Positions 23,985 to 38,190 are shown, counted from the first letter of the stretch. The stretch is 64,000 bases of DNA from Dimorphilus gyrociliatus (GCA_904063045.1 CAJFCJ010000005.1:4059689-4123688); one strand, 5' to 3'. Notes: generated by a model not told the origin, from the sequence alone. Translations and numbers: made by a program.

Positions 23985-24953
23985 CTATGAGCTCTTCCTA
24001 TATGGCCCAAAGAATCTTCTCCATAAAGGAAGAATTGTTGTACCAAATGTTTGCAAAGAATATATCAATATGGCTGAAAAGGTTTCGACAATACATTAGT
24101 AAGTGATATAAAGTGAACGAAATAGGAATAAAATAATGCTTACTATCTTTATTTCGTCTAATCATATAAACAAGACAAAATACGAAAGCGATTAAAACTT
24201 GATATCGTAATTTTATATAACGAGATAAAATATCGTAAAAGCCTTTCTTTTTTTCGATAGTTTCTTCTAGTTCTTGCAGCTTTTCCTTATTCTTAGAATC
24301 GATATCGGCAGTTTCCAATTCTTTAGCTTTCATTACATATTTCGTCTTGAGATCATTATCTAGACCACAGCTCTCAGACAGTTTAATAATATCGTTGAAT
24401 TTTTTCTGAGGTGCCAATACATTAACAATATAATTGTCAAGTACTCCAAGATAATGTTCAGACGAAAAATTTGACTTATTATGTAACCATATATGGGCAA
24501 TGGCATTACAAGTTGCGTAGTCTTTGATTTTATAATGTAATTTTAAGCTATAAAAAATCAATTTATTCTTAAAGTTTTATTTTAATTATGAAAAAGAGAA
24601 TAAATCTAATATCTTACCATGTTAAGGTAATCAAACTAGGACAGTCTTCAATACCATTATAAATTTTTGTTACTAGTGGAAAAGCTTCTCTCCATTCGTT
24701 TAGTTCAGCGTAACATTGTATTGCCAATATACAAAATTCTTTTATTAGTTGCTTATTCCTAAATTAAATCAAAGTAACGTATACAGTATCCATTTATCGC
24801 TCAAACTACTTACTCTTCGGAATCTATTTTAGTCTTAAGAACGTCTAAGCATTGTAAGCAAATGTCTAAGGATTCTCGAAACTCTTTATTCATAATTAAT
24901 GAGTTTGCTGATCGGAGATTTGCGCGGAATTCTTCTATAGTTTGGTCTTCCAT
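23985..24953 (-). CDS. PEX26: Peroxisome assembly protein 26 (tail-anchored PEX1/PEX6 receptor)
   Basis: Spliced product: MEDQ...LRSANSLIMNKEFRESLDICLQCL | ...FCILAIQCYAELNEWREAFPLVTKIY...CLKLHYKIKDY...WLHNKSN...YIVNVLAPQKKF... followed by a TM (YQVLIAFVFCLVYMI) and a basic tail from last exon 24073-23985. It aligns by eye to vertebrate PEX26 (LCVVGIQALAEMDRWQEV; WLQDPAN). Confidence 0.8.
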
Positions 24954-25931
24954 AGTCGGCTAAAGTACAACAAATATTTCAATTGCAACGTTCTAAGCGA
25001 AAACTGGTAACAATATCAAAAAAACTAGAACGCGAGTCTTTAACAAGCCAACAAACTAGAAAAACTAGAAAGAAAAGTGATATTTTTTTAAAATAAGCCA
25101 AATAAATAATATGAGAAACGTATAGATTTTTTGTTCTAGTAGCATTTTGTAACAATTTAAAGTCACACTTAGAGATGGTAAACTTGTCAAACTAACTTTT
25201 TTATTATTGTCTACGAGTGAATATAGAAGATATCTATCTTTCTTCTATATAGATAATAGTATAAAGATAAAAGTTAAACAGAAACATAATAATAGAAAGA
25301 TATTTAAAAAATGTAATCAATTTATTTCATTACATAATATATAAACAATTATCAATTTTTTAATATTAATATTATTAATAATATAGCTGAGCATTTTAAT
25401 TGAGTTTTTATAAGGGTTTTTTGTTAGTTTTCATTTTTTACATTAAGAAAATATATAAAACTTTAACGAATATATAACATTAGAATGTTATGTTTATTTG
25501 TTTGAAAGGATTATATCTATTGAATATTAAATAATTCAATAAATCGTTTTTAATTTGTGGTATGAACAACTTTATATTACAATTTCTTAATTGTTTATAT
25601 TCATTTCATTAATAAGTCTATGGAAAATTGTTAAAATTAATAAATTTTTATTAGAAAGTAATAATTATGTATATTTATTTCGTTTTTAAGGTGAATTTGG
25701 AAATATAAAATTCAGTATGATCAGTTAGTGCGGGACTGCTCATCGGCTAAATTGCATTTTGCTAGAAACCAATAAATTGTCGAATTAAAGTTATTGACAC
25801 GCCTTGTTATCAGTTATTACCAAACTCACCCACTATTATATAATGAGGCAAGTATTTTTCACGTGTCGTTTTTTGTTGACTGTTTGACTAAGGCCCTCTA
25901 ATACAAGAATCGCGTTTGTAATTTTTTCAAC

Positions 25932-26587
25932 ATGGCCGACATGATTGTGTTTATTGAATTTCGTCTATTAAAATTACATAACATTATTTTCTTTATAGTC
26001 CTCCAATTAGTAAAGAAAACAAAGATATACTGCAGAAAATGATAATCGACACAATTGCAATGCTTTGTCGATCACATTTTGAGAAAGAACCCTATTTTAG
26101 GCTAGATGGCGTGGTGGGACTAACGCTATCCTCCGATGACGTTGTCCTTATCAATATGCATAAGGAAGTAGAAAATGAAACCGCTTTAATTAGCCATGTT
26201 CGAAAGAGGCCATTGGATGAGAAAGAATTAAACTCTGAAGACATTAAGCGAAGAAAGACGAAGAGGGAACAAGAAGACGATTCAGATTGGGTTGATCTAA
26301 CTGATCATGATATTGAAGTTAAGGAGGAAGTTGACGAACCAAATTATGAAACATTGCCCGATAATACAGCCCGACTAGAAGATGATAATAATCGACAAGA
26401 GGACCACTCTCAGGATGACCGGCAGACAGATACACCTCCAAAGAACAATTGGCCTGGCTTGGCAGGTAGTTCGACATCTTCTGCAGAATTTTGTGCTCCT
26501 GTAGTTGGTAAGATAGTTGCAACACCATTGTCAACAATATCTACTCTTTCAACAACCGGAGTAACATCAGCCGGTTCAACAAAGCAG
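25932..26587 (+). CDS. Common 5' exons of a C2H2 zinc-finger locus: a helical N-terminal module plus an acidic and Ser/Thr-rich linker
   Basis: Exon 25932-25948 and exon 25999-26587: MADMIVPPISKENKDILQKMIIDTIAMLCRSHFEKEPYFRLDGVVGLTLSSDDVVLINMHKEV...GSTKQ, ending at a phase-0 donor CAG|gttcgc. Confidence 0.75.
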
Positions 26588-27660
26588 GTTCGCATATATT
26601 TACTTCGCATTTTCTTGCCTTTAACCCACCCTTCGCCCCTAAAATTTAGCACTATACCAAAGTAATAATTACGAAAGAAAGTCTTAAATAGAATATCTGA
26701 GAGTAAATAAAGAAAATTACGCTTCCTTCGTTTATTCTATATTTAATCTTAATTTAGAAGATTCATACGTAATCTATAGGAAGTAAAGCGTAGTTTTCAA
26801 TCTTTCTTTTCTATTTTCATTTTCCTTATTTGCTTTTATTTACTTCTTTTTCTACTTCTGATTTTCTCATTCTTCTTCTGCTTCTTTTCCTTTCTCTATT
26901 TCCTTCTAGTCAAGTCTAAGTTTTAATTTATTCAACATAAACAAACCGTATTATTGTTATTATTATTATTGTTATTTTCTGTCGTAAATCTTTCTCTCCC
27001 TAGATAAATTATTCATAAGATACGCATGTTAATGAACAAATAGTCACCTGTTAAAAGAAGAAGAAAAAGTAAAACATATAAAATATTCAAAGCACAAAAA
27101 TCAAGTAAAAACAGCCACAACAGCAAGAAAAGATATATAATATCAGAAAGAGATGTGATCTATTCTAGTTATAATTAAATCTTTTAATCTTAACATCATT
27201 TAAATAACTAATTAGCGAAGGAAAAATGACAAAAAATAGGACGTTACCTTTTTGCTTAATCTGTGAAAATGAGTCAAATACGTTATCAAATGTATACAAC
27301 CCTTGTATTATAATTATTTTTATAACTTATTTTTTCTTTTATATTTTTTAGTGATAGGTTTATTAGTTTGTTATTTTATTCACTTATTCGTTCATTCACT
27401 CAGTCATTATTTTTATATTAAGTAGTAAAAGGGAAGAAGAAATATTTGGGAGTTGATGACCCATCAATTTTTCAACCAGTACATTTTCACTTTCGTTTTT
27501 ACTCATTTAATATTAGTAATATTTTTTAAAATATGTTCAACTTATAGTGTACAGTATAGAATGTATTAAGAAATGTATTACTTTTATAATCGTTCTACTG
27601 TAAAAGTGCACATCTGCACATTTATTACAGTTTATCCATAATTTTCTTTCTATCGTTTCT

Positions 27661-27672
27661 CTCTCCCTCTCT

Positions 27673-27729
<57 letters not shown>

Positions 27730-27730
27730 A
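27661..27730. repeat. (CT)n microsatellite, slightly interrupted
   Basis: CT dinucleotide run. Confidence 0.9.
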
Positions 27731-28679
27731 TCTCTGTAAAATCAACTATTATTTTGTTTCTGATATACAAATATCCGTTTATAAATTGCAGTTTATATTG
27801 ATATTACGATAAGAGAATGATACAAATACTGATCTGTTCAAGACATATTTTTTCGATTACTTTGAAATATATTTAAAAATAAAAAAAAAGGGGTGAGGAT
27901 GGGAAAGGGAACATTGGGGAGTTGGGGAGAAATGGTTATTTTAAAAAAAAATATACTTTTTCTCTTTTTTTCTTTATGTTCTAAATGGGAAAATTTAAAT
28001 TAGAGATATCAACAAAAAAAAAGTAATAAGTTTACTTATATTCTCAGGTAAAAAAAAAAGAAAAAGATACCTAACAAACATTAATTAACTATATATTTTA
28101 TATAAATTAATATACCTTTTAGTTGTTGGAGAGATTGACTGCTTCGTTCAAAAAAAGAGGGTCTTCTCTTTTTTTGAAATGCTTGTACTAAATTATAGAA
28201 AATAATCTAATATCTTCCTTCTAAATCTATACTATTAATTATGTTTAAAACATGAATTAATTGAATTGTTAACAACAATTAGATCAATGAAATCGAATTG
28301 AAAATTTATCAATTAAATGAATAATAGATTATATGAGAAGAAATCTTGGATAATTTAATAATTTTTTAAATTGAGGCTTAAGAAAAAAATTAAATGAAAG
28401 AACGTTTCGTAGTGAATGAATGTTATCACTTTCAAAGAATTATATTATATAGTCAACTCATGATCTCTTCCTCTCTAATTGTTTGGAATAAGTTTTAAAT
28501 TACTTTTTTTTTCATTGATTTTTCATCTCAATTAAAAAGAATGAAAAAAAAATTAATCCTTTGATTAGTAAACACAAAAGGCTTTTTTTTTTATTTTTGT
28601 TTCGCGTACAAGTTAAAATGAAAATAAAAAAAAATAGAAATAAGGCAAAAGTGCTGACCTGCGGTCTTTCATAACGCAG

Positions 28680-28970
28680 AGAGAAAAAGTAAAGAAGGAA
28701 CCTTCGGTATGCGTCGAATGCGGCAAGTGGTTCTCGAGCAGGGCGCACGTCCGCCGACATATGAGGAAACACACTGGCGAAACACCTTATGCATGCTCTT
28801 TTTGCCAAAGTCGCTTTTCACGTAGTGATGAATTGAAGACGCACGTTGTGCGAAAACACCCAGAACAATGTTGTTATTCATGCAGTTCTTGTACTCAGAG
28901 ATTTGTTAGCGAGAAGCATCTGAGCAGGCACAAGTGTATTAACGATCAAATTAAATTGCCGACAAGTTAG
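28680..28970 (+). CDS. Alternative terminal zinc-finger exon A (three fingers, the last C2HC-like)
   Basis: Branch-like ctgac and acceptor ataacgcag|, phase 0: REKVKKEPSVCVECGKWFSSRAHVRRHMRKHTGETPYACSFCQSRFSRSDELKTHVVRKHPEQCCYSCSSCTQRFVSEKHLSRHKC...*. Confidence 0.82.
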   Translation, partial: REKVKKEPSVCVECGKWFSSRAHVRRHMRKHTGETPYACSFCQSRFSRSDELKTHVVRKHPEQCCYSCSSCTQRFVSEKHLSRHKCINDQIKLPTS

Positions 28971-30005
28971 GAATATTCTTTTTTTTATGTTTTTTTTTGT
29001 GAAGAGAATTTTTGTATATATTCAAATAATTGAATGATAATACAAGAACAAATTGGTTCAATATTGGTATATATTTGAAAAACTATCTCTGAAATTTACT
29101 CATGCCGAAGGTGGCCTCTTGCTGCTGAGGTCGTCGGAAAATTTACTGAACAGAAGTATATATCTCTACACCTATTATGCTTTCTCTCTCTTTTTCTTTC
29201 TTTCTTTCTATCTTTGTTTATATATCTAATATGTATGATCTTCCTCTTTATTCTGTCACTCTGTCTCTCTCTCTTTTTCGCTCTCTCTCTCTCTCTCTCT
29301 CATTTCTAATTCTAATCTATAATACCTCTTCTAGTCTAGTAGTCATCTTTCATCCTCATTTTTTTTTATCTCTCAGTGTGTTTTCACACACCTTCACATA
29401 ATATTTCATAGCGAAATATGTATTCACAATATTATACTATATATGTATATATGCAATATTTGTTATAGTATATACACATAAATATTGACTAAACAATTTC
29501 TCGTATAACGATATCCGGGCGTCGAGAATACGAGAACGTGACCACCTGTTAAGCTGACCAAAGGGAGAAAAAGAAAAAGGTAAAAGAGTAGGAAAGTAGG
29601 AGGATGAGGATGAGGAGAAGGAGGAGAAGGAAAATGAAAAAGAAATTGTGGAAAAATTAAGAGGAATGTGATAAGCGAGAAAGATAAGGAGAAAAAAAAA
29701 GCAAGAAAGAAGTATATTTGTATATTATGGTATATGAATAATTGCTTTTATTAGTAATAAGAGAATTGAATTTAAAAGAATCTATCTATACTGTTTGTTT
29801 TTGAAAAACGTTAATTTTAATAGGAAAGCAAAATAAAGAAGAATAGTTTGCTAAGGAGTTAGAATCTATCATAAATACATAAAATCATATAAGTTGATTA
29901 GCATTAATGGAAAGTTTATGATGTTCTTTCTAGTTTTTTTACTCTTTACTGAATTAAACATTCCATAAATATTCATGATATATAAAGCTAACTGTCCTAT
30001 AATAG

Positions 30006-30150
30006 ATTTGGGAATACTCCCATTGTCATACACCGTTACCTTCACATGGAAACGTTGCCCGACCCGAGAGAACACAGTACGGGTGAAAGGCCATTTCCGT
30101 ACAATCATTGTGGTAAGAGCTTCAAGGGTGGGCAGTTTTTGCAACCGGAT
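30006..30150 (+). pseudogene. Decayed alternative zinc-finger exon B
   Basis: Phase-0 acceptor ctaac...ataatag|, then IWEYSHCHTPLPSHGNVARPERTQ (Cys to Tyr, His to Pro). An extra base at ~30077 shifts the frame, after which TGERPFPYNHCGKSF (Cys to Tyr) continues. Confidence 0.65.
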
Positions 30151-30716
30151 TTTTATATAGGCTTAAAGGCCCTATTCATATTAAGAGAAAAGTGGGCTTT
30201 AGATAATATTGTTGGCTTGTTCATCTTGACTATTTATCATTACTATTTGAATTTTGCGGAAAAAAAGAGACTAAAACAAAACTTTTGGCGAAGATCTTTT
30301 GTTCTCCCGCAAATAAAACGAATGAGAAGAAATTATTAAATAGAATTTGAGATTATTTTTACAACCAAATAATATCATAAAATGATCTCAACAGCAATTA
30401 AAACAAAACCGATGTAAAGTTCTTATCTATGAAGAGAAATAGTCGTATCCCTATCATTCAAGATATTTTGTGATATTTTTAAATCCCTTTTGTTTTTCAT
30501 TGTCTTCTTAGTTTTACCTTTCTGTCTCTTTTTTTTTCTTTCTTTCTATTTTTATGTCATTTTTTTCTGTTTTTTTTACGTAAACAAAAACATCAAAAAA
30601 CAAACAAACAACAAAACAAAACAAACTAAAAGACGAAACTCTTTTGATTTCATACAAAAAAAATAATAAAACAAACAAAAAATTGGAGTTTGCACAACTT
30701 ATTTTTTCTTAAGCAG

Positions 30717-31082
30717 GGAAAGTTGAAAAAGTGCCAAATTTGCCAGAAAGAATTATCAAGTCAAAGAGTACTTAGACGCCACGCCAAGACTCATAATTCG
30801 GAAAGAAAGTTCCTTTGTAAAGTATGCGGAAATTCTTATAAACGATCGGATCATTTAAACGAACACGTTCTTCACAAACATCCTCAAATTGAACGTTTTT
30901 TATGTATGGTTTGCAAGACCAAATTTAAGAAGATGACAGATTTTAAACATCATACAACTACTGTTCATGCTAATACACCAATTATGATAAGAGATTGTGA
31001 TTCGGACGGTTTTATAGAGAAAATTGCGGTTGTAGAATATAATAGAGAGGCCGAAATAGCAGACGCTTCGTTGTTGTCTTAG
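30717..31082 (+). CDS. Alternative terminal zinc-finger exon C (three C2H2 fingers)
   Basis: Acceptor ttttttcttaagcag|, phase 0: GKLKKCQICQKELSSQRVLRRHAKTHNSERKFLCKVCGNSYKRSDHLNEHVLHKHPQIERFLCMVCKTKFKKMTDFKHHTTTVH...*; AATAAA at 31153. Confidence 0.85.
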   Translation, partial: GKLKKCQICQKELSSQRVLRRHAKTHNSERKFLCKVCGNSYKRSDHLNEHVLHKHPQIERFLCMVCKTKFKKMTDFKHHTTTVHANTPIMIRDCDSDGFIEKIAVVEYNREAEIADASLLS

Positions 31083-31377
31083 TTGATTTTGTCAAAAAAA
31101 AGTGTAAATAACCGAAATGTACAAAAAAAAATACGAAAACAAAAATAGCTATAATAAACTAAACACCAAAAAACATCAAAAAAATGAAAGATATACATTA
31201 ACCTATATTTTTAAGTCCTAAAAGAGAAAAAGAACTTTATTAATTAGTTGCATAGAATGAAAGAGAATGTCCTCGTTTTAGGGTTAAACCTAAGAGAAAA
31301 AGTATAAAAACAAACAAAACAACAGCAAAAAAACCAAAACTCTTTAAATATTGACTTTGTACTCTGTATATATATAG

Positions 31378-31650
31378 GTACGGGATAAGCGAACGTGTCA
31401 GCTATGCCTAAAGAGGTTCCCATCTTCAGCACACGTCCATCGACATATGGTGGTTCACACGAAGGAAAAACGCTATGCCTGCCTTTATTGTGATGTCAGA
31501 TACTCGCAAAAAACTCACTTGACAAGTCATATTGCTAAAAAGCATCCAGAAATTTCACCCTTCTCTTGCGATTGCTGTTCAATGAAATTTAAGAGCTATA
31601 AGGAGATGAAAGAACATCGAAACACCAATCATTTCTTATCCTTGGCCTAA
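31378..31650 (+). CDS. Alternative terminal zinc-finger exon D (three C2H2 fingers)
   Basis: Acceptor tatatag|, phase 0: VRDKRTCQLCLKRFPSSAHVHRHMVVHTKEKRYACLYCDVRYSQKTHLTSHIAKKHPEISPFSCDCCSMKFKSYKEMKEHRNTNH...*; AATAAA at 31804. Confidence 0.85.
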   Translation, partial: VRDKRTCQLCLKRFPSSAHVHRHMVVHTKEKRYACLYCDVRYSQKTHLTSHIAKKHPEISPFSCDCCSMKFKSYKEMKEHRNTNHFLSLA

Positions 31651-34600
31651 TCTACGTGATCTTCCCGTTCATTAATCGTAGCTATATGACTATTCGCCTG
31701 TAAACCATTCATCATAATCCGTCAAAAGCAGGGGGAGAAGGGGATGAAACAAGCTCAAGGTCATTAGTAAATTACTGCAAAGATTATCCATAAGAGAAGG
31801 TGGAATAAAAGATTGGTTTGAATAAATGTTTGAGAAGAATTGTTAAGAAAAAGAAAGAATTCTACCTTTTAAGTGGCTGTTTATCTCACGAAAAAGTCAT
31901 TATTGTTCCTTATATATAACAAGTCCGTAATTGCAGTTTCTCTATATAACATCGTAAATAATCCATGATTCTTTTCCAAGTTAAGAAAAGACAAATAAGC
32001 ATGCATACTATAAATAGTATATCAGTATATATGCAATATATACCATATGTAAAAGAAAATGCAATAATTCTTTGATGAACATGTTCTATACTGTCAGAGT
32101 TTATCCCTCCAAAGAAAACCTATGAGGGCGGAAGAACATTTCTCTACTCGGGTTGTGGGAACCTTGTTTTCGACTTAGCCGCCCCTAATTATAGCTCAAA
32201 GTCGATCCGAAGCCAAAATATTTCGCAATTTCCCATCATTTTATTTATGAAATATAGTGAACTATTTTCAAACGAAACTAAACTCACGAAATCATTTTCT
32301 CGGTCGCAATCTAAAGCACGCAAATCATCTAGACTTTCATTAAACAAATTATACCGATTACTAAAGATTCCCAGTATTCCCTCCTTCCTTCCTGCTTCTT
32401 TTCCGTTCTCTTTCTCTCTTTTCTTTTTATTATTAGAGGAATTGAAACAATTGAAGGTCCATCCATAAGTTACGTAATGGATGTTTTACTTGTTCTTCTT
32501 ATATTTTCCATAATAAATTTTATTAAGTAAATAGAGCTATGAATTAATAAAAACTCTACTTGAAACCATTTTCCTTTCTTCATTCAATCTCTTTAATATC
32601 CTAAGCTTTGATTCTCTGTCTTTCTTTCTCTCTCTCTCTCTCTCTCTCGACCACTTTCATAATATAGCTTCTTTTTCCCTTTAATCCGAATTAATTCCCC
32701 CCTTCTACTTTTTAAATTACACATTCCATCTTACAACAATATGCGCTTATGTACACGAATACATAATTAAACATTCATTCATTCATTCACCCATTTATTT
32801 CATTTCGCCTTTCTTCCCTTCCATCTAAAGTCACCGATACACAATTAAATTACGCAATGGGTAACGTAAGAATCTATTTTAAAGCTTTTTCGACAGTTGG
32901 ACATAAAGGAAGAATTGATTGATTTTGGGTAGCACGTAACTGTGTTGCCCAGAAGTTTGTCTTGGCTTTTAACAGATGATGAAAACGTCTACAAGATGCA
33001 AATTAAATGATTTACGGTAACAGATAAACCCTCTAGAGGATATTCAATAACACATAAGGTTTCCTCTTTATTAGTCACTTATAGAGTATACGACTTACAC
33101 CTGCTGGCAAATTTGCAAAGTTTTAACGAATGACATTAGAAGACAAAGGAAAGAGGAATTCATTAGAATTATTAGTCGTTCTTGCCTCTTTCCTCGAAAA
33201 TAAAAAGGATGAGAATTAAGAGACGCAATAAGAATATCAATAATCAACTATACAAGTATAGTACACTTTTTTATTAGTCAAAGTAAGAAACGTTCATCGT
33301 AAGTGGAGGTGTCATCACTAAAAAACCATCACAATTAATTAAATTATATCCAAAAGGCATTTGCTATTTCTTTTCTCTCGTTTATAATCTCCTTTCTTCT
33401 ACATCATTAATTAGGCAAGAAATTGACATAAGATGCACTACTTCCGCTTTTCAACCTAATAACCCAATAGTAATTTTATTCAAGTGAACGCAGAAAATTA
33501 TTAACCTTTGCACGATACTTACCTGTATTTGAAAGTCACTTTCTATGCCTCTTCGTCTGCCTATCTTTCTATACTGTATCTCTTCTCTCTCTCTCTCTCT
33601 CTCTTTTTTTTTCTTTTTATTTTGCTTCTCTATCCCTGTCTCTATCTCTCCGTATTTCTCTTCATTATGCTGTAATGCTAAGTAAAATGAATATTTCTTT
33701 GGAAAAAGTTACTTCGCATAAGACTGAGCATAACACAACCTGGCAATTAACGAAGGTAATAAATAGATGCTTTAGCAACTTTCATGTCACAAAATTCCAA
33801 TAGATTGGCTATTTCTTTAGATAAATTAAAAAAAAAAACCAATACCAGATAAGTGAGTTAGTTTTCATTAATCAAAGAAACTTATGCGCCTACGGGAAGA
33901 AGAAGAAAAAGACAGGAAAAGATATTTCATACAAAAGGACGATGGAAAATAGGGTATTAAAGAGGTATGAAGAAGAACAAAGAAAGAAGAAAGTTGGAAA
34001 AAAATTGAAAATAAAAGTTGAGAATAAACTGGACGGTATCGTCCGTAAAGATAGTCAAAAGAAAGCGTGACATACATGAAGGATAAGGCCAAAATGGAAT
34101 ACAAATTTAGCACCTAAATTCTAGAATTTCCCACCATTGGCCATTCTGCACACTTTAGCCGAATAATTCAGAATATGTTTTCCCTGTTTTTTTTACTGAG
34201 TAATACATAGATAATAAATAAAAGCAAAAAGTGGGGCACAGAGGTAGGGGGACGGAGAAAGAGAAAGGGAGAGAGAGGAGCGGGAAAGAATTGACAAACA
34301 TTAAAAAACAAGCACTTTTTCAGGTCAACATTCGCATAATACAAAACATGTGAAAAAAGCATTATAGTAGAGGAAATCAACATGACTAACAATAAGGCTA
34401 AAGTAATAGATATACAAATAAAAAAACGTATAAAAATGTTGAATATGTCATTTATTATCACCTAAAATGATTATTTCGTTAAGTTACGTAAGAGTCAACT
34501 GGAAATAAGCGACAAAACTTTATAATAGCAAACAATAAGAAGAGAGAAACCTTTCAAAAAAATCTGTACTAAAGAAAAGAAGAGTAAATAAAGGGCTTTT

Positions 34601-35280: not shown

Positions 35281-36393
35281 TCAAGTGGCTGCCAAATTTT
35301 CCAGATCAACTTCAGCAAGGTGTCGACTGTGTCTGCTGAAGGAGAAGGATACGTGACATTTTGTAAAGTTATACCGAATCTTTACTAGGAGCGCCTGAAA
35401 GGCAGTCCGAAATGATTTAGAGCAGGCGCTGTACAAATAAAAGTTAAAGGAGAAGGACGTGTAAAAGAGGAACTGGAAAATAGCTTGCCAATTAACCGCT
35501 TGTGACGTAACTGTTGATTCTGAATAAAGTCCAAAAACGAATGGCATTCGATAAAGATGACTAGGGAGATTGAGAGCTATAAAAACTGTAGAAACGATAA
35601 GTAACGTCCGTGTTGTGCGCAATTGCAGTTTCGTGCAGGATCGAAGTACTCTTATCCTTCTACCTTCTGATCTTAAGGATGATGTTGACGACGAAGTTTT
35701 CTTTTCAAACCTTATAATAAGAGTAGGATCTGCAAATTTCTTCCTCTTCTGCACAAATCGAACAACCTTAATCATTATCGATATATTAAGTATGAGCAAA
35801 AGGCAGGACGGTAAAATACATGTTACAACTGTATCGACTGCAATCATTGCTTTATGAATATGAAAGTGACGAGCAATAGGTCGACATATTTTTTTTCCTT
35901 TCTCCTCAACTATGCCGTTCGACCAAATTGTATAAGAGTAAAGTAACAAACCGGAAACAGTTATTGAAAGCAATATTCTCTTCGTATTCTTTCTCTTGCA
36001 CCATTCATGCTTTAAAAAAGGTTTATATACTATGATAAATCTCTCAATAGTAAAGCAAACAACCGTCCAAACACTCTGATAGGTTGTCACTGGCAATATA
36101 TAGTTGAAAAGTTGACAAAACCCCTGCTTATGTAGCATATGAAAATTCAAGTGGCCAAGAAAAGTTGTACAGGCTAGACCTAACAAGAATATAAAATCTA
36201 CTGCAGCCAAATATGCAAGGTACAAGGAAGTTGTTTGCCTGACGAGATAAGTACCAAGGAAAACTGCTATAGTCACCGTGTTACCGATCAGACCGCTCAA
36301 CAGGATAATCGGAAGGAAGTAAGTGTGTAACGTCACTTGTATAACGTCAACGAAGCTGGACGAATTGTCCAACGACGAAACGTTCCTATTCAT
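35281..36393 (-). CDS. Rhodopsin-class GPCR, invertebrate neuropeptide-receptor-like (FMRFamide/MIP-receptor-related clade), intronless
   Basis: 370 aa, seven TM segments, N-glycosylation sites in the N-terminus, GLIGN (TM1), LAAVD (TM2), FTIERF (TM3), LNLP (TM6) and FSFNFYLY (TM7). Confidence 0.9.
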   Translation of the reverse strand: MNRNVSSLDNSSSFVDVIQVTLHTYFLPIILLSGLIGNTVTIAVFLGTYLVRQTTSLYLAYLAAVDFIFLLGLACTTFLGHLNFHMLHKQGFCQLFNYILPVTTYQSVWTVVCFTIERFIIVYKPFLKHEWCKRKNTKRILLSITVSGLLLYSYTIWSNGIVEEKGKKICRPIARHFHIHKAMIAVDTVVTCILPSCLLLILNISIMIKVVRFVQKRKKFADPTLIIRFEKKTSSSTSSLRSEGRRIRVLRSCTKLQLRTTRTLLIVSTVFIALNLPSHLYRMPFVFGLYSESTVTSQAVNWQAIFQFLFYTSFSFNFYLYSACSKSFRTAFQALLVKIRYNFTKCHVSFSFSRHSRHLAEVDLENLAAT

Positions 36394-37134
36394 GTAGACG
36401 TCCAGCTGCCTTCTGCAAAAAAAGTACCATAGAGAAACAGTCGCATGGTGACGCTCCTGATTGCCGCTCTTTCGTTTTTATAGACGTCTGCGATATACTT
36501 TAAACAGAGTATCATACCTACTGTAAATTTGTTTCGTTTAGGTTGGTCGAGCCATTCATTTCATTTTCTAAAATCTTTAGTTAGGATTCAGCCTGGAAAG
36601 AAGAAGAAGGTAGATTCCAAAGTTGTAGAGGCATACCGCCTTTAATCAACGACAAAAGCAATGTACCAGATGATGATTCGATCTGAATGACGTCGTCAGA
36701 TAAGCAAAAAAATACAAGTTCTTCTATAGCTTCATGCTAAGAAATACCACTGTAAAAAACCTATTATTATGTAGACCTATTGTCCATACAATGCATATAT
36801 ATACATGTCTGTCTTTCTCCCTCTCGTCTTAATTCTCTCTCACTACTTACTCACCTACTAAGGTACTCTAGTCGTCTATTTATACATTTTATTATATGCT
36901 TCTGCCGCTGTCCAATATGTATAATTATCCTTATAATTAACGGCGCCATTAGATGACGCCACAAATACAATTATGGCGGATACTTTAGGTTAAAAATGGT
37001 TTCATAACTTTCCTACTGACCCCGTCGAACGCAGCGAATCATTTATTCCAGGCAGGTGACGCTGTTACGCAAAGGCGTCTATTGTTGCTTCTCTGACTGT
37101 GCCAGGCTGCGGGAAATTTACGATAGATAAGAGT

Positions 37135-38190
37135 ATGCTAACTTTATCTAGAAATTTAACTGATAGAGAACTGCAGACAATAGCTTTAAATCATCAACTT
37201 CACAAAATACTCCTTCCTATCATAACAATACTTGGAATAGCTGGAAACGTCTTATCATTTAGCGTCTTCACGACAAATCGCTACAAAAGAAAAAGTGCAA
37301 GCGTCTTTCTCGCTTTCTTGGCTGTTGCCGATTCGGGATTTCTGCTTTCCTTAATACCTATTTGGCTGGGTTATATGAAAATTCATGCCTTTCATGTTCA
37401 AGGCTTGTGCCAGATAATTCTATATGGAACTTACGTATTTGGTTTTCTATCTGTTTGGACCGTAGCTGCCTTCACAATAGAAAGGACTATAGTCGTTTTC
37501 CTGCCTTTGGCAAAACATAGACTTTGTACGAGAAGAAAAGCCAAAGGCTGTGTAATAATTATGACAATTTTCGCACTTATCGCCTATTCATTCTCTGTTT
37601 GGACGTCAGGCGTGGTAAAACAAGAAAGTACTCAACAATGCCGCCCATTTGCTAAATACGAAAACTTTTTAAGAATAGCTACTAGCGTTGATACTGTTCT
37701 TACGCTGATCTTACCATCTCTAATTATAGTTATCTTAAATACTGCCATTGCAAGCAAACTATTTATCTACTTGAAAGGTCGAGGGCAAACATCTGGTAGT
37801 AGAGATCGCCAACAAACGGAGAAAGAAGAAACACATCAATTAACTAGTCGCGTAACGGACATCAGTGGTGTACAGTTGAGAATCAATAAAACTTCCTCCT
37901 CTCGATTTGTTGAGAATACTCAAGCAAGAACAACACTCTCTCTCATAGTTGTTTCAAGTGTATTCGTAGCTCTGAACTTACCATGTCACGCCTATCGTAT
38001 CCACGGATTCGTTATAGATCTTGCAGGCTTCAAATTTAAGAACGCCAGCTCTGAGCCGGGCTTTTATCAAGGATATTTGCAACTGCTATATTATATAAAC
38101 TTTGCTGTCAATTTGTATTTGTATAGTTTGTGTAGCCCAGCATTTAGGAAAGCAGCCTACAAACAATTATTTCGGAGTTGTTCATGCTAA
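37135..38190 (+). CDS. Rhodopsin-class GPCR, paralog of 35281-36393, intronless
   Basis: Seven TM segments, GIAGN, LAVAD, FTIERT, LNLP and FAVNLYLY. First ATG at 37135; the ORF track starts at GTG 37099. Confidence 0.9.
   Translation: MLTLSRNLTDRELQTIALNHQLHKILLPIITILGIAGNVLSFSVFTTNRYKRKSASVFLAFLAVADSGFLLSLIPIWLGYMKIHAFHVQGLCQIILYGTYVFGFLSVWTVAAFTIERTIVVFLPLAKHRLCTRRKAKGCVIIMTIFALIAYSFSVWTSGVVKQESTQQCRPFAKYENFLRIATSVDTVLTLILPSLIIVILNTAIASKLFIYLKGRGQTSGSRDRQQTEKEETHQLTSRVTDISGVQLRINKTSSSRFVENTQARTTLSLIVVSSVFVALNLPCHAYRIHGFVIDLAGFKFKNASSEPGFYQGYLQLLYYINFAVNLYLYSLCSPAFRKAAYKQLFRSCSC

What the first reader, a model, noticed from the sequence alone, without database searches (positions are those of the whole stretch)
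25932..31650. One common N-terminal module, four phase-matched alternative terminal zinc-finger exons: a lola/broad/fruitless-like isoform system without a BTB domain
Seen in sequence: the common exon ends in a phase-0 donor at 26587. Downstream lie four homologous triple-finger blocks at 28680, 30006, 30717 and 31378. Each starts exactly at a phase-0 AG acceptor and ends in its own stop, and none has its own ATG or N-terminal exon. The three intact blocks share HxxxKHP in finger 2 but differ in recognition helices (finger 2: RSDELKT, RSDHLNE, QKTHLTS). Established: Drosophila lola, broad, fruitless and mod(mdg4) join a constant BTB region to variable zinc-finger exons to diversify DNA specificity. 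Inference: this locus uses the same logic with an unrelated N-terminal module in a lophotrochozoan-like genome, giving one promoter and several transcription factors. I know of no description of this arrangement outside insects.
Basis: partly seen in the sequence, partly recalled or inferred. Interest (0 to 1): 0.85.

Follow-up and report, generated by a model that had tools for sequence, protein, structure and literature searches.

The report
Annelid gene with swappable zinc-finger ends
One gene of the tiny marine worm Dimorphilus gyrociliatus joins a single front half to any of three alternative DNA-gripping zinc-finger ends, as the fly genes lola and fruitless do but with an unrelated, unnamed front domain, and related genes in other worms are built the same way.

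Summary
The window is from Dimorphilus gyrociliatus. A common coding exon (25999-26587) ends in a phase-0 donor. Three intact triple C2H2 blocks (28680, 30717, 31378) each open at a phase-0 AG, lack a usable ATG and end in their own stop. The 30006 block is only a decayed relic.

- Public proteins DgyrCDS4065 and DgyrCDS4064 equal the common exon joined to block 1 and to block 4, letter for letter.
- Block 3 is unannotated. In a related species it is 97% identical in protein, with many silent changes and the same acceptor and stop.
- The N-terminus is not BTB. It is an unnamed ~55-residue domain (helix plus beta-hairpin; no Pfam or PDB match), also found in Paralvinella, Capitella and many unlabelled assemblies.
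- Related loci carry 2 to at least 8 start-less terminal finger blocks behind one such exon.
- In one species, two intronless contigs share that exon and then switch to different finger blocks exactly at the junction.

The scan noted related start-less finger exons elsewhere in this genome.

The parts
25722..25847 (+). Exon 1: conserved 5' region ending in the 5-nt first coding piece ATGAG (start codon 25843-25845). The 5' boundary is approximate and the TSS is not determined.
   Evidence: Public proteins start MS-PPISK, which requires ATGAG + T of 25999. The stretch 25722-25847 is nearly identical in the related species.
25848..25998 (+). Intron 1 (151 nt), GC-AG here (AG|GCAAGT); the related species has GT at the same position.
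   Evidence: Alignment A1; exact reconstruction of both annotated proteins across this intron.
25999..26587 (+). Common coding exon: unnamed ~55-aa N-terminal domain (helix + beta-hairpin), then an acidic and Ser/Thr-rich linker. It ends in a phase-0 donor, CAG|GTTCGC.
   Evidence: Domain family. Model pLDDT 83. The donor is identical in the related species. pN 0.13, pS 0.44.
28680..28970 (+). Terminal exon 1 (block 1): 96 codons + stop, three C2H2 fingers. Joined to 26587 in public protein DgyrCDS4065.
   Evidence: In the related species: 98% protein identity, pN 0.009, pS 0.14, with the acceptor and a CTGAC branch-point-like site conserved.
28971..29162 (+). Conserved 3' UTR of block 1 (about 190 nt, long stretches identical between species; contains TGTATATA). 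No AATAAA or ATTAAA within 450 nt.
30006..30130 (+). No intact finger in the frame opened by the AG at 30004-30005.
30717..31082 (+). Terminal exon 3 (block 3): 121 codons + stop, three fingers plus a 35-aa tail. Not in the public annotation; predicted here to be a third alternative end. AATAAA at 31153.
   Evidence: 97% protein identity, pN 0.02, pS 0.55; acceptor TTTTTTCTTAAGCAG| and stop conserved; first Met only at residue 64.
31300..31377 (+). Conserved ~75 nt just upstream of the block-4 acceptor. It contains no ATG. Probably branch site, polypyrimidine tract and splicing control.
31378..31650 (+). Terminal exon 4 (block 4): 90 codons + stop, three fingers. Joined to 26587 in public protein DgyrCDS4064. 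AATAAA at 31804 and 31821.
   Evidence: In the related species (partial): 88% protein identity, pN 0.08, pS saturated.

Best explanation
This is one gene of the annelid Dimorphilus gyrociliatus, spanning about 25.7-31.9 kb on the + strand. One promoter and one constant N-terminal part (a 5-nt first coding exon plus the 589-nt common exon) are joined, through a single phase-0 donor at 26587, to one of three mutually exclusive terminal exons. Each terminal exon encodes a different triple C2H2 zinc-finger unit with its own stop and 3' UTR. These are alternative last exons, meaning splice choice coupled to poly(A)-site choice.

The products share an unnamed ~55-residue N-terminal domain and an acidic linker but differ at most recognition positions of fingers 2 and 3, so they most likely act as transcription factors with different DNA targets.

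Shown: the exon anatomy, junctions to blocks 1 and 4 in the public protein set, and purifying selection on all three blocks. Inferred: use of block 3, separate poly(A) sites, DNA binding, and any pairing role of the N-terminal domain.

The design is a trait of the whole domain family: related loci carry 2 to at least 8 such terminal finger exons.
For: Organism and public isoforms. My splice products equal DgyrCDS4065 (block 1) and DgyrCDS4064 (block 4) exactly. The annotation method gives alternative variants from PASA transcripts.

Anatomy, phases and absence of ATG.

Related species (Logan contigs L001-L003):
- the donor, the three acceptors and the stops covered (blocks 1 and 3; the contig ends inside block 4) are conserved;
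- pN/pS is 0.009/0.14 for block 1, 0.02/0.55 for block 3 and 0.08/0.76 for block 4, against 0.13/0.44 for the common exon;
- nothing exon-like is conserved between 26605 and 28618.

The introns are 2.1-4.8 kb, against a genome median of 66 bp.

Family:
- 22 distant and 54 closer proteins carry the N-terminal domain, and nearly all the ORFs read through a ...Q|GT phase-0 donor;
- arrays of 7, at least 6, at least 8, 2 and 2 start-less finger blocks, each with a pyrimidine-rich phase-0 AG, lie behind one such exon;
- the Paralvinella annotated model uses exactly such a junction.

In one further species, two intronless contigs are 849/851 identical up to CAACAG| and 69% identical after it, each continuing into a different finger block. 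A third record reads through the donor.
Against: No reads could be laid on the locus, so I saw no junction reads myself. The two public isoforms are gene models whose transcript support I infer from the paper's methods.

No public protein joins the common exon to block 3.

Block 1 has no canonical poly(A) hexamer within 450 nt.

The stretch 29163-30716 is not covered by the related species' contigs, so an unseen exon feeding block 3 is not excluded.

DNA binding and distinct specificities are inferred from sequence only. Finger 1 of blocks 1 and 4 has the same contact residues.
Confidence: 0.85

Rival explanations
1. Only blocks 1 and 4 are alternative ends of this gene. Block 3 is a coding exon of something else (fed by an unseen exon between 29163 and 30716, or by a rare donor inside block 1), or it is used only in a condition never sampled.
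For: No public protein of 108-343 aa joins the N-terminal part to block 3, although three other products of the locus are on record. The related species' contigs do not cover 29163-30716.
Against: Block 3 has pN 0.02 against pS 0.55, a conserved strong acceptor in phase 0, no ATG before residue 64 and a conserved stop. The pre-mRNA that makes the block-4 product must run through it. The only conserved phase-0 coding donor upstream is 26587. Related loci use many blocks of the same build.
Confidence: 0.12
2. The blocks are separate small zinc-finger genes, each with its own promoter or first exon, and the public joined models are annotation artefacts.
For: Tandem paralogous finger units are a common product of gene duplication. 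I could not inspect reads.
Against: There is no in-frame ATG upstream of the fingers in either species, while the residues before the first Met are conserved as protein. No conserved sequence upstream of block 1 beyond about 60 nt of acceptor region, and no ATG in the conserved stretch upstream of block 4. The models include a GC-AG intron, which ab initio predictors rarely propose. Spliced contigs in another species show the same junction type with two different blocks.
Confidence: 0.03

Closest known systems
Drosophila longitudinals lacking (lola), and likewise fruitless, broad and tramtrack (TTK-type BTB zinc-finger loci)
   Same: A constant N-terminal protein module is made from common 5' exons and joined to one of several alternative 3' exons. 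Each 3' exon encodes a different small C2H2 unit with its own stop, giving several factors from one locus (lola: 17 of 20 isoforms with different fingers, PMC11426971).
   Different: There is no BTB domain here. There are three fingers per end rather than the usual pair. The organism is an annelid, whereas TTK-type BTB is reported as arthropod-specific and was not found in Annelida. All exons are collinear on one strand, so ordinary cis-splicing suffices, while lola and mod(mdg4) also use trans-splicing. Only three ends here, although related loci have up to at least 8.
Drosophila mod(mdg4)
   Same: One common N-terminal part is joined to many alternative terminal exons that carry the DNA- or partner-binding domain.
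   Different: mod(mdg4) has BTB plus FLYWCH domains, exons on both strands and trans-splicing. None of that is seen or needed here.
Alternative last exons (splicing-coupled alternative polyadenylation) in general
   Same: One donor, several acceptors, each followed by a stop and a 3' UTR. The proximal ends sit inside what is an intron for the distal isoform.
   Different: Here every alternative end is a paralogous, complete DNA-binding unit, and the layout is conserved across a gene family. It is not a truncating or UTR-changing event.
Human PEG3/ZIM2 (from my own memory; the paper read did not state it)
   Same: Recalled as two zinc-finger proteins that share 5' exons and differ in their finger-coding 3' exons. 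If so, the logic is not confined to insects.
   Different: That is a KRAB/SCAN-type vertebrate locus with long finger arrays, not a tandem array of short paralogous ends. Not verified here.
Earlier scan notes on this genome: shared first exon with alternative nuclear-receptor cassettes (s1-080184); start-less zinc-finger end exons (s1-080369); three tandem zinc-finger genes sharing an unnamed ~55-aa N-terminal domain and a 5-nt first coding exon (s1-081934)
   Same: The same theme of one 5' part serving several DNA-binding ends. The last note appears to describe paralogues of the very domain and 5-nt first exon found here.
   Different: They are other loci, and I did not examine them.

Membership tests
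TTK-type BTB zinc-finger multi-isoform loci (lola/fru/broad/ttk) | N-terminal BTB/POZ domain of the TTK type | tested here: not met
   Pfam gives no family at E<=1 for the 196-aa common part or for ten relatives. The AlphaFold model is one helix, a beta-hairpin and a short helix, and no PDB match was found.
TTK-type BTB zinc-finger multi-isoform loci (lola/fru/broad/ttk) | Common 5' exons joined to alternative 3' exons that each encode a different C2H2 unit | tested here: met
   Two junctions equal public proteins. The third end is inferred from conservation.
TTK-type BTB zinc-finger multi-isoform loci (lola/fru/broad/ttk) | Arthropod lineage | tested here: not met
   The organism is the annelid Dimorphilus gyrociliatus. 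The TTK motif is reported absent from Annelida.
Alternative-last-exon gene | One shared donor and two or more acceptors, each followed by its own stop | tested here: met
Alternative-last-exon gene | A separate poly(A) site after each end | tested here: inconclusive
   AATAAA at 31153 (block 3) and at 31804/31821 (block 4). None within 450 nt of block 1, which instead has a conserved 190-nt 3' UTR. No 3'-end reads.
Alternative-last-exon gene | Junction-spanning RNA for each end | not testable with these tools
No run on record as RNA holds the locus.
C2H2 zinc-finger proteins | C-x2-C-x12-H-x3-5-H units matching Pfam zf-C2H2 | tested here: met
   zf-C2H2 / zf-C2H2_4 above the curated cut-off in all three blocks.
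Unnamed N-terminal-domain zinc-finger family (annelids and unlabelled assemblies) | An N-terminal domain of about 55 aa (helix ending in L-C-[KR]-x, then strands around G-[IV]-T-L and [VI]-[FV]-L-[VI]) at the very start of the protein | tested here: met
   phmmer hits at E 2e-9 to 1e-3. In the alignment of 30 domains, Cys is invariant and L, G, T, L are nearly so. 54 further members.
Unnamed N-terminal-domain zinc-finger family (annelids and unlabelled assemblies) | A large first coding exon ending in a phase-0 donor, followed by one or more start-less terminal finger exons with phase-0 acceptors | tested here: met
   Window. Loci L004, L005, L010, L012, L013. Capitella P0070 shows no such array, so the feature is not universal.

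The most novel reading that the evidence does not exclude
Annelids (perhaps spiralians more widely) have a transcription-factor family defined by an undescribed ~55-residue N-terminal domain. The family routinely diversifies DNA specificity through tandem arrays of 2 to at least 8 mutually exclusive terminal zinc-finger exons. This would be a convergent counterpart of the arthropod TTK-BTB loci (lola, fruitless, broad). The N-terminal domain would play the pairing role of BTB, and isoform choice would be set by competition between splice and poly(A) sites. The unusual silent-site conservation of block 1 would mark the control sequences.
Probability: 0.55. Interest if true: 0.72.

Novelty: new variant of a known kind. 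Interest (0 to 1): 0.6.

Why it matters
Loci that make many transcription factors from one promoter by swapping the DNA-binding end are known from arthropod BTB genes, where they control neuronal wiring, sex-specific behaviour and metamorphosis. That gene class is reported as arthropod-specific.

An annelid family does the same with an unrelated N-terminal domain, and the layout is conserved across distant annelids with arrays of up to at least eight ends. This indicates the design arose independently, so it can be studied comparatively.

It also matters for annotation. Such loci are filed as several genes (here two CDS numbers plus an unannotated third end), so zinc-finger factor counts and orthology tables in spiralian genomes are distorted.

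The unnamed domain is a candidate new protein-interaction module.

Tried and rejected
- Reads: the look-up of sequencing runs gave no run on record as RNA. The three small-share runs hold 7-9% of the words. That share fits the near-identical block 1 and its UTR in the related species, not RNA.
- Exact look-up of DgyrCDS4064 on contigs: not on record.
- Naming the N-terminal domain failed with every tool: Pfam, profile against PDB sequences, Foldseek PDB (best E 0.5), VIA-align wide (best Z 3.5), and ESM Atlas by features and by shape (only its own annelid cluster).
- Naming the source organisms of the unlabelled contigs through cluster look-ups gave no names.
- Papers: no paper holds the three locus names. 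One search failed on a term with an apostrophe. The PEG3 review did not state the shared-exon point I recalled.
It lies in the annotated intron, and both differences between species inside the short reading frame change the amino acid while the flanks are identical. That suits a regulatory element better than coding sequence, though an alternative first exon is not excluded.
- Sequential splicing of the blocks into one six- or nine-finger protein is rejected. The stops of blocks 1 and 3 and the 35-residue tail of block 3 are conserved as coding.
- The intron-retaining 223-aa public product is rejected as a functional short isoform. Its read-through tail is not conserved in the related species.
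Full report
**What is there.** The window is AT-rich (about 32% G+C). A protein search with the common exon returned 100% matches named DgyrCDS4064 [Dimorphilus gyrociliatus], so the window comes from this miniature annelid.

- The common exon is open from 26000 and ends CAG|GTTCGC after 26587, a phase-0 donor.
- Right after AG dinucleotides at 28678-9, 30715-6 and 31376-7 begin three reading frames of 96, 121 and 90 codons.
- Each frame has three C2H2 fingers (Pfam zf-C2H2 above cut-off) and its own stop.
- The blocks are 33-39% identical to each other, with the same finger spacing.
- None has an in-frame ATG between the nearest upstream stop and the acceptor. The first Met lies at residue 28, 64 and 24, inside or after the fingers.
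- A scan of the whole window found no other multi-finger frame.

The fourth block (30006) is only a relic. In phase 0 from its AG it reads 26 residues without a finger, and a one-to-two-finger remnant lies in another frame.

**The start of the gene.** The public proteins begin MS-PPISK. That requires ATGAG at 25843-25847, a GC donor (AG|GCAAGT) and the acceptor before 25999. The related species has GTAAGT at the same place, and the 5' region from about 25722 is nearly identical. With this 5-nt first coding exon I rebuilt both public proteins exactly. The two differences between species inside its short frame both change the amino acid, so I read it as a regulatory element. An alternative first exon is not excluded.

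**Are the blocks joined to the common exon?** I could not lay reads. 

The public protein set answered for two blocks. The 90%-identity cluster of the intron-retaining product P0001 also holds DgyrCDS4065 (CAD5115047.1, 294 aa). DgyrCDS4065 equals exon 1 + common exon + block 1, and DgyrCDS4064 (288 aa) equals exon 1 + common exon + block 4, both letter for letter.

The genome paper states that transcript assemblies (PASA) were weighted tenfold and were used to generate alternative splice variants, giving 14,203 loci and 17,409 peptides (PMC7854359). So these two junctions most likely rest on transcripts. The GC-AG intron in the models points the same way. No product joining the common exon to block 3 is on record.

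**Comparative evidence.** Logan contigs of runs SRR23372228, SRR23372229 and SRR23372231 hold the orthologous locus of an unnamed related species. The same paralogue protein occurs in two of these runs, so I treat them as one species.

| Part | Protein identity | pN | pS |
|---|---|---|---|
| Common exon | 75% | 0.13 | 0.44 |
| Block 1 | 98% | 0.009 | 0.14 |
| Block 3 | 97% | 0.02 | 0.55 |
| Block 4 (first 65 codons covered) | 88% | 0.08 | 0.76 |

- The donor, all three acceptors with their upstream 35-75 nt, and the stops of blocks 1 and 3 are conserved; the related contig ends inside block 4, before its stop. The related species also has no ATG ahead of the fingers.
- About 190 nt after the block-1 stop are conserved, as expected for a 3' UTR.
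- Between 26605 and 28618 nothing exon-like is conserved by blastn or tblastx, so block 1 has no conserved first exon of its own.
- The conserved stretch upstream of block 4 holds no ATG.

Block 3 is therefore a translated exon that needs an upstream phase-0 coding exon. The pre-mRNA of the block-4 isoform runs through it. I put its use as a third alternative end at about 0.7-0.8.

The introns (2,092, 4,129 and 4,790 nt) are 30-70 times the genome's median of 66 bp.

**The N-terminal module.** It has no Pfam match and is not BTB. An exhaustive phmmer search found 22 distant relatives matching residues 5-90. A word-based search seeded with one of them found 54 more.

The alignment of 30 domains shows a ~55-residue unit with an invariant Cys and nearly invariant L, G, T, L. 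It sits at the very N-terminus, and in some proteins it is tandemly doubled.

AlphaFold with this alignment gives a helix, a beta-hairpin and a short helix (pLDDT 83). There is no convincing solved-structure match: Foldseek best E 0.5, VIA-align best Z 3.5, profile against PDB sequences none. In the ESM Atlas it matches only its own cluster, commonest phylum Annelida.

Named members are Paralvinella palmiformis KAK2164442.1 (N-terminal domain plus three fingers) and Capitella teleta CAPTEDRAFT_220096. A pairing role like that of BTB is my inference only.

**The design is a family trait.** Nearly all family ORFs called on genomic contigs read through a ...Q|GT donor in phase 0. Downstream of the N-terminal exon I found these arrays:

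| Locus | Source | Finger blocks behind the N-terminal exon |
|---|---|---|
| L005 | ENA ERZ25070167 | 7 triple-finger blocks |
| L010 | paralogue, same assembly | at least 6 |
| L013 | ENA ERZ21781341 | at least 8, mostly four-finger blocks |
| L012 | ENA ERZ26222911 | 2 |
| L004 | Paralvinella palmiformis | 2 |

Each block has its own stop and a pyrimidine-rich AG in phase 0. The Paralvinella model uses exactly a phase-0 donor to phase-0 acceptor junction. Capitella's member shows no array.

In one further species, two intronless contigs (L011 from SRR6255878 and L014 from SRR28002515) are 849/851 identical through the 5' UTR and N-terminal exon up to CAACAG|. After that point they are 69% identical, each continuing in frame into a different finger block. 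A third record of the same gene reads through the donor into intron. That is spliced-RNA-type evidence for alternative terminal finger exons in this family.

**Mechanism.**
- Shown: one donor and three acceptors with stops; two junctions in public models.
- Inferred: transcription from one promoter near 25.7-25.85 kb. The spliceosome pairs 26587 with one acceptor and cleavage follows that exon. AATAAA lies at 31153 and at 31804/31821; block 1 has no canonical hexamer but has a conserved UTR.

By the usual -1, 2, 3, 6 contact positions (read by eye):

| Finger | Block 1 | Block 3 | Block 4 |
|---|---|---|---|
| 1 | SAHR | SRVR | SAHR |
| 2 | RDET | RDHE | QTHS |
| 3 | SKHR | KTDH | SKEE |

Different DNA targets are therefore plausible but untested.

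**Comparison and novelty.** The logic is that of lola, fruitless, broad and tramtrack. Those rest on the TTK-type BTB domain, reported as arthropod-specific and not found in Annelida (PMC11426971). Here the constant part is an unrelated, unnamed domain, and ordinary cis-splicing suffices.

The two isoforms are already in public databases under separate CDS numbers, so the data are not new. I found no paper naming these loci or describing the arrangement.

Earlier scan notes on other pieces of this genome report start-less finger end exons (s1-080369), tandem finger genes with an unnamed ~55-aa N-terminal domain and a 5-nt first coding exon (s1-081934), and alternative nuclear-receptor cassettes behind one first exon (s1-080184). 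I did not test those loci.

I class this as a new variant of a known kind. The family-wide arrays and the new domain are the parts worth following up.

Noticed in passing
window 28680-29162: Block 1 is far more conserved at silent sites than the other exons: pS 0.14 against 0.44-0.76 (Fisher p about 5e-8 against the pooled others). Its 3' UTR has long identical stretches, including TGTATATA (a Pumilio-like motif, from memory). This suggests RNA-level constraint, perhaps control of the proximal splice/poly(A) choice.
   Followed up: partly
The two changes between species inside its short frame are both amino-acid changing. It could be a regulatory element or a second first exon.
   Followed up: partly
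window 25846-25849: The first intron has a GC donor (AG|GCAAGT) in D. gyrociliatus and a GT donor at the same position in the related species.
   Followed up: yes
window 31300-31377: About 75 nt upstream of the block-4 acceptor (an A/C-rich stretch followed by TCTTTAAATATTGACTTTGTACTCTGT) is conserved, while the rest of the 296-nt spacer is not.
   Followed up: no
window 26731-26753: A 23-nt match (96%) to the related species lies inside the otherwise unconserved 2.1-kb intron, collinear but at a different distance from the donor. E is 0.008, so it may be chance.
   Followed up: no
window 35281-36393 (-) and 37099-38190 (+): Two intronless ORFs of 370 and 363 aa that look like seven-helix receptors by eye. 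They bound the locus on the downstream side.
   Followed up: no
window 23998-25013 (-): A minus-strand gene head-to-head with this locus, conserved with the related species (24500-25013, 69% DNA identity). The roughly 0.8-kb spacer is probably a divergent promoter.
   Followed up: no
L006 10001-11983: The related species has a paralogue (P0012) whose N-terminal-domain exon is followed within 0.4 kb by a single long frame with four fingers. So not all family members have arrays.
   Followed up: partly
window 26588-26665: A public 223-aa product (P0001) retains the intron after 26587. Its 25-residue read-through tail is not conserved in the related species, so it is probably unspliced RNA captured by the annotation.
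   Followed up: partly
window 27655-27730 and 29270-29310: (CT)n microsatellites lie inside the long introns.
   Followed up: no
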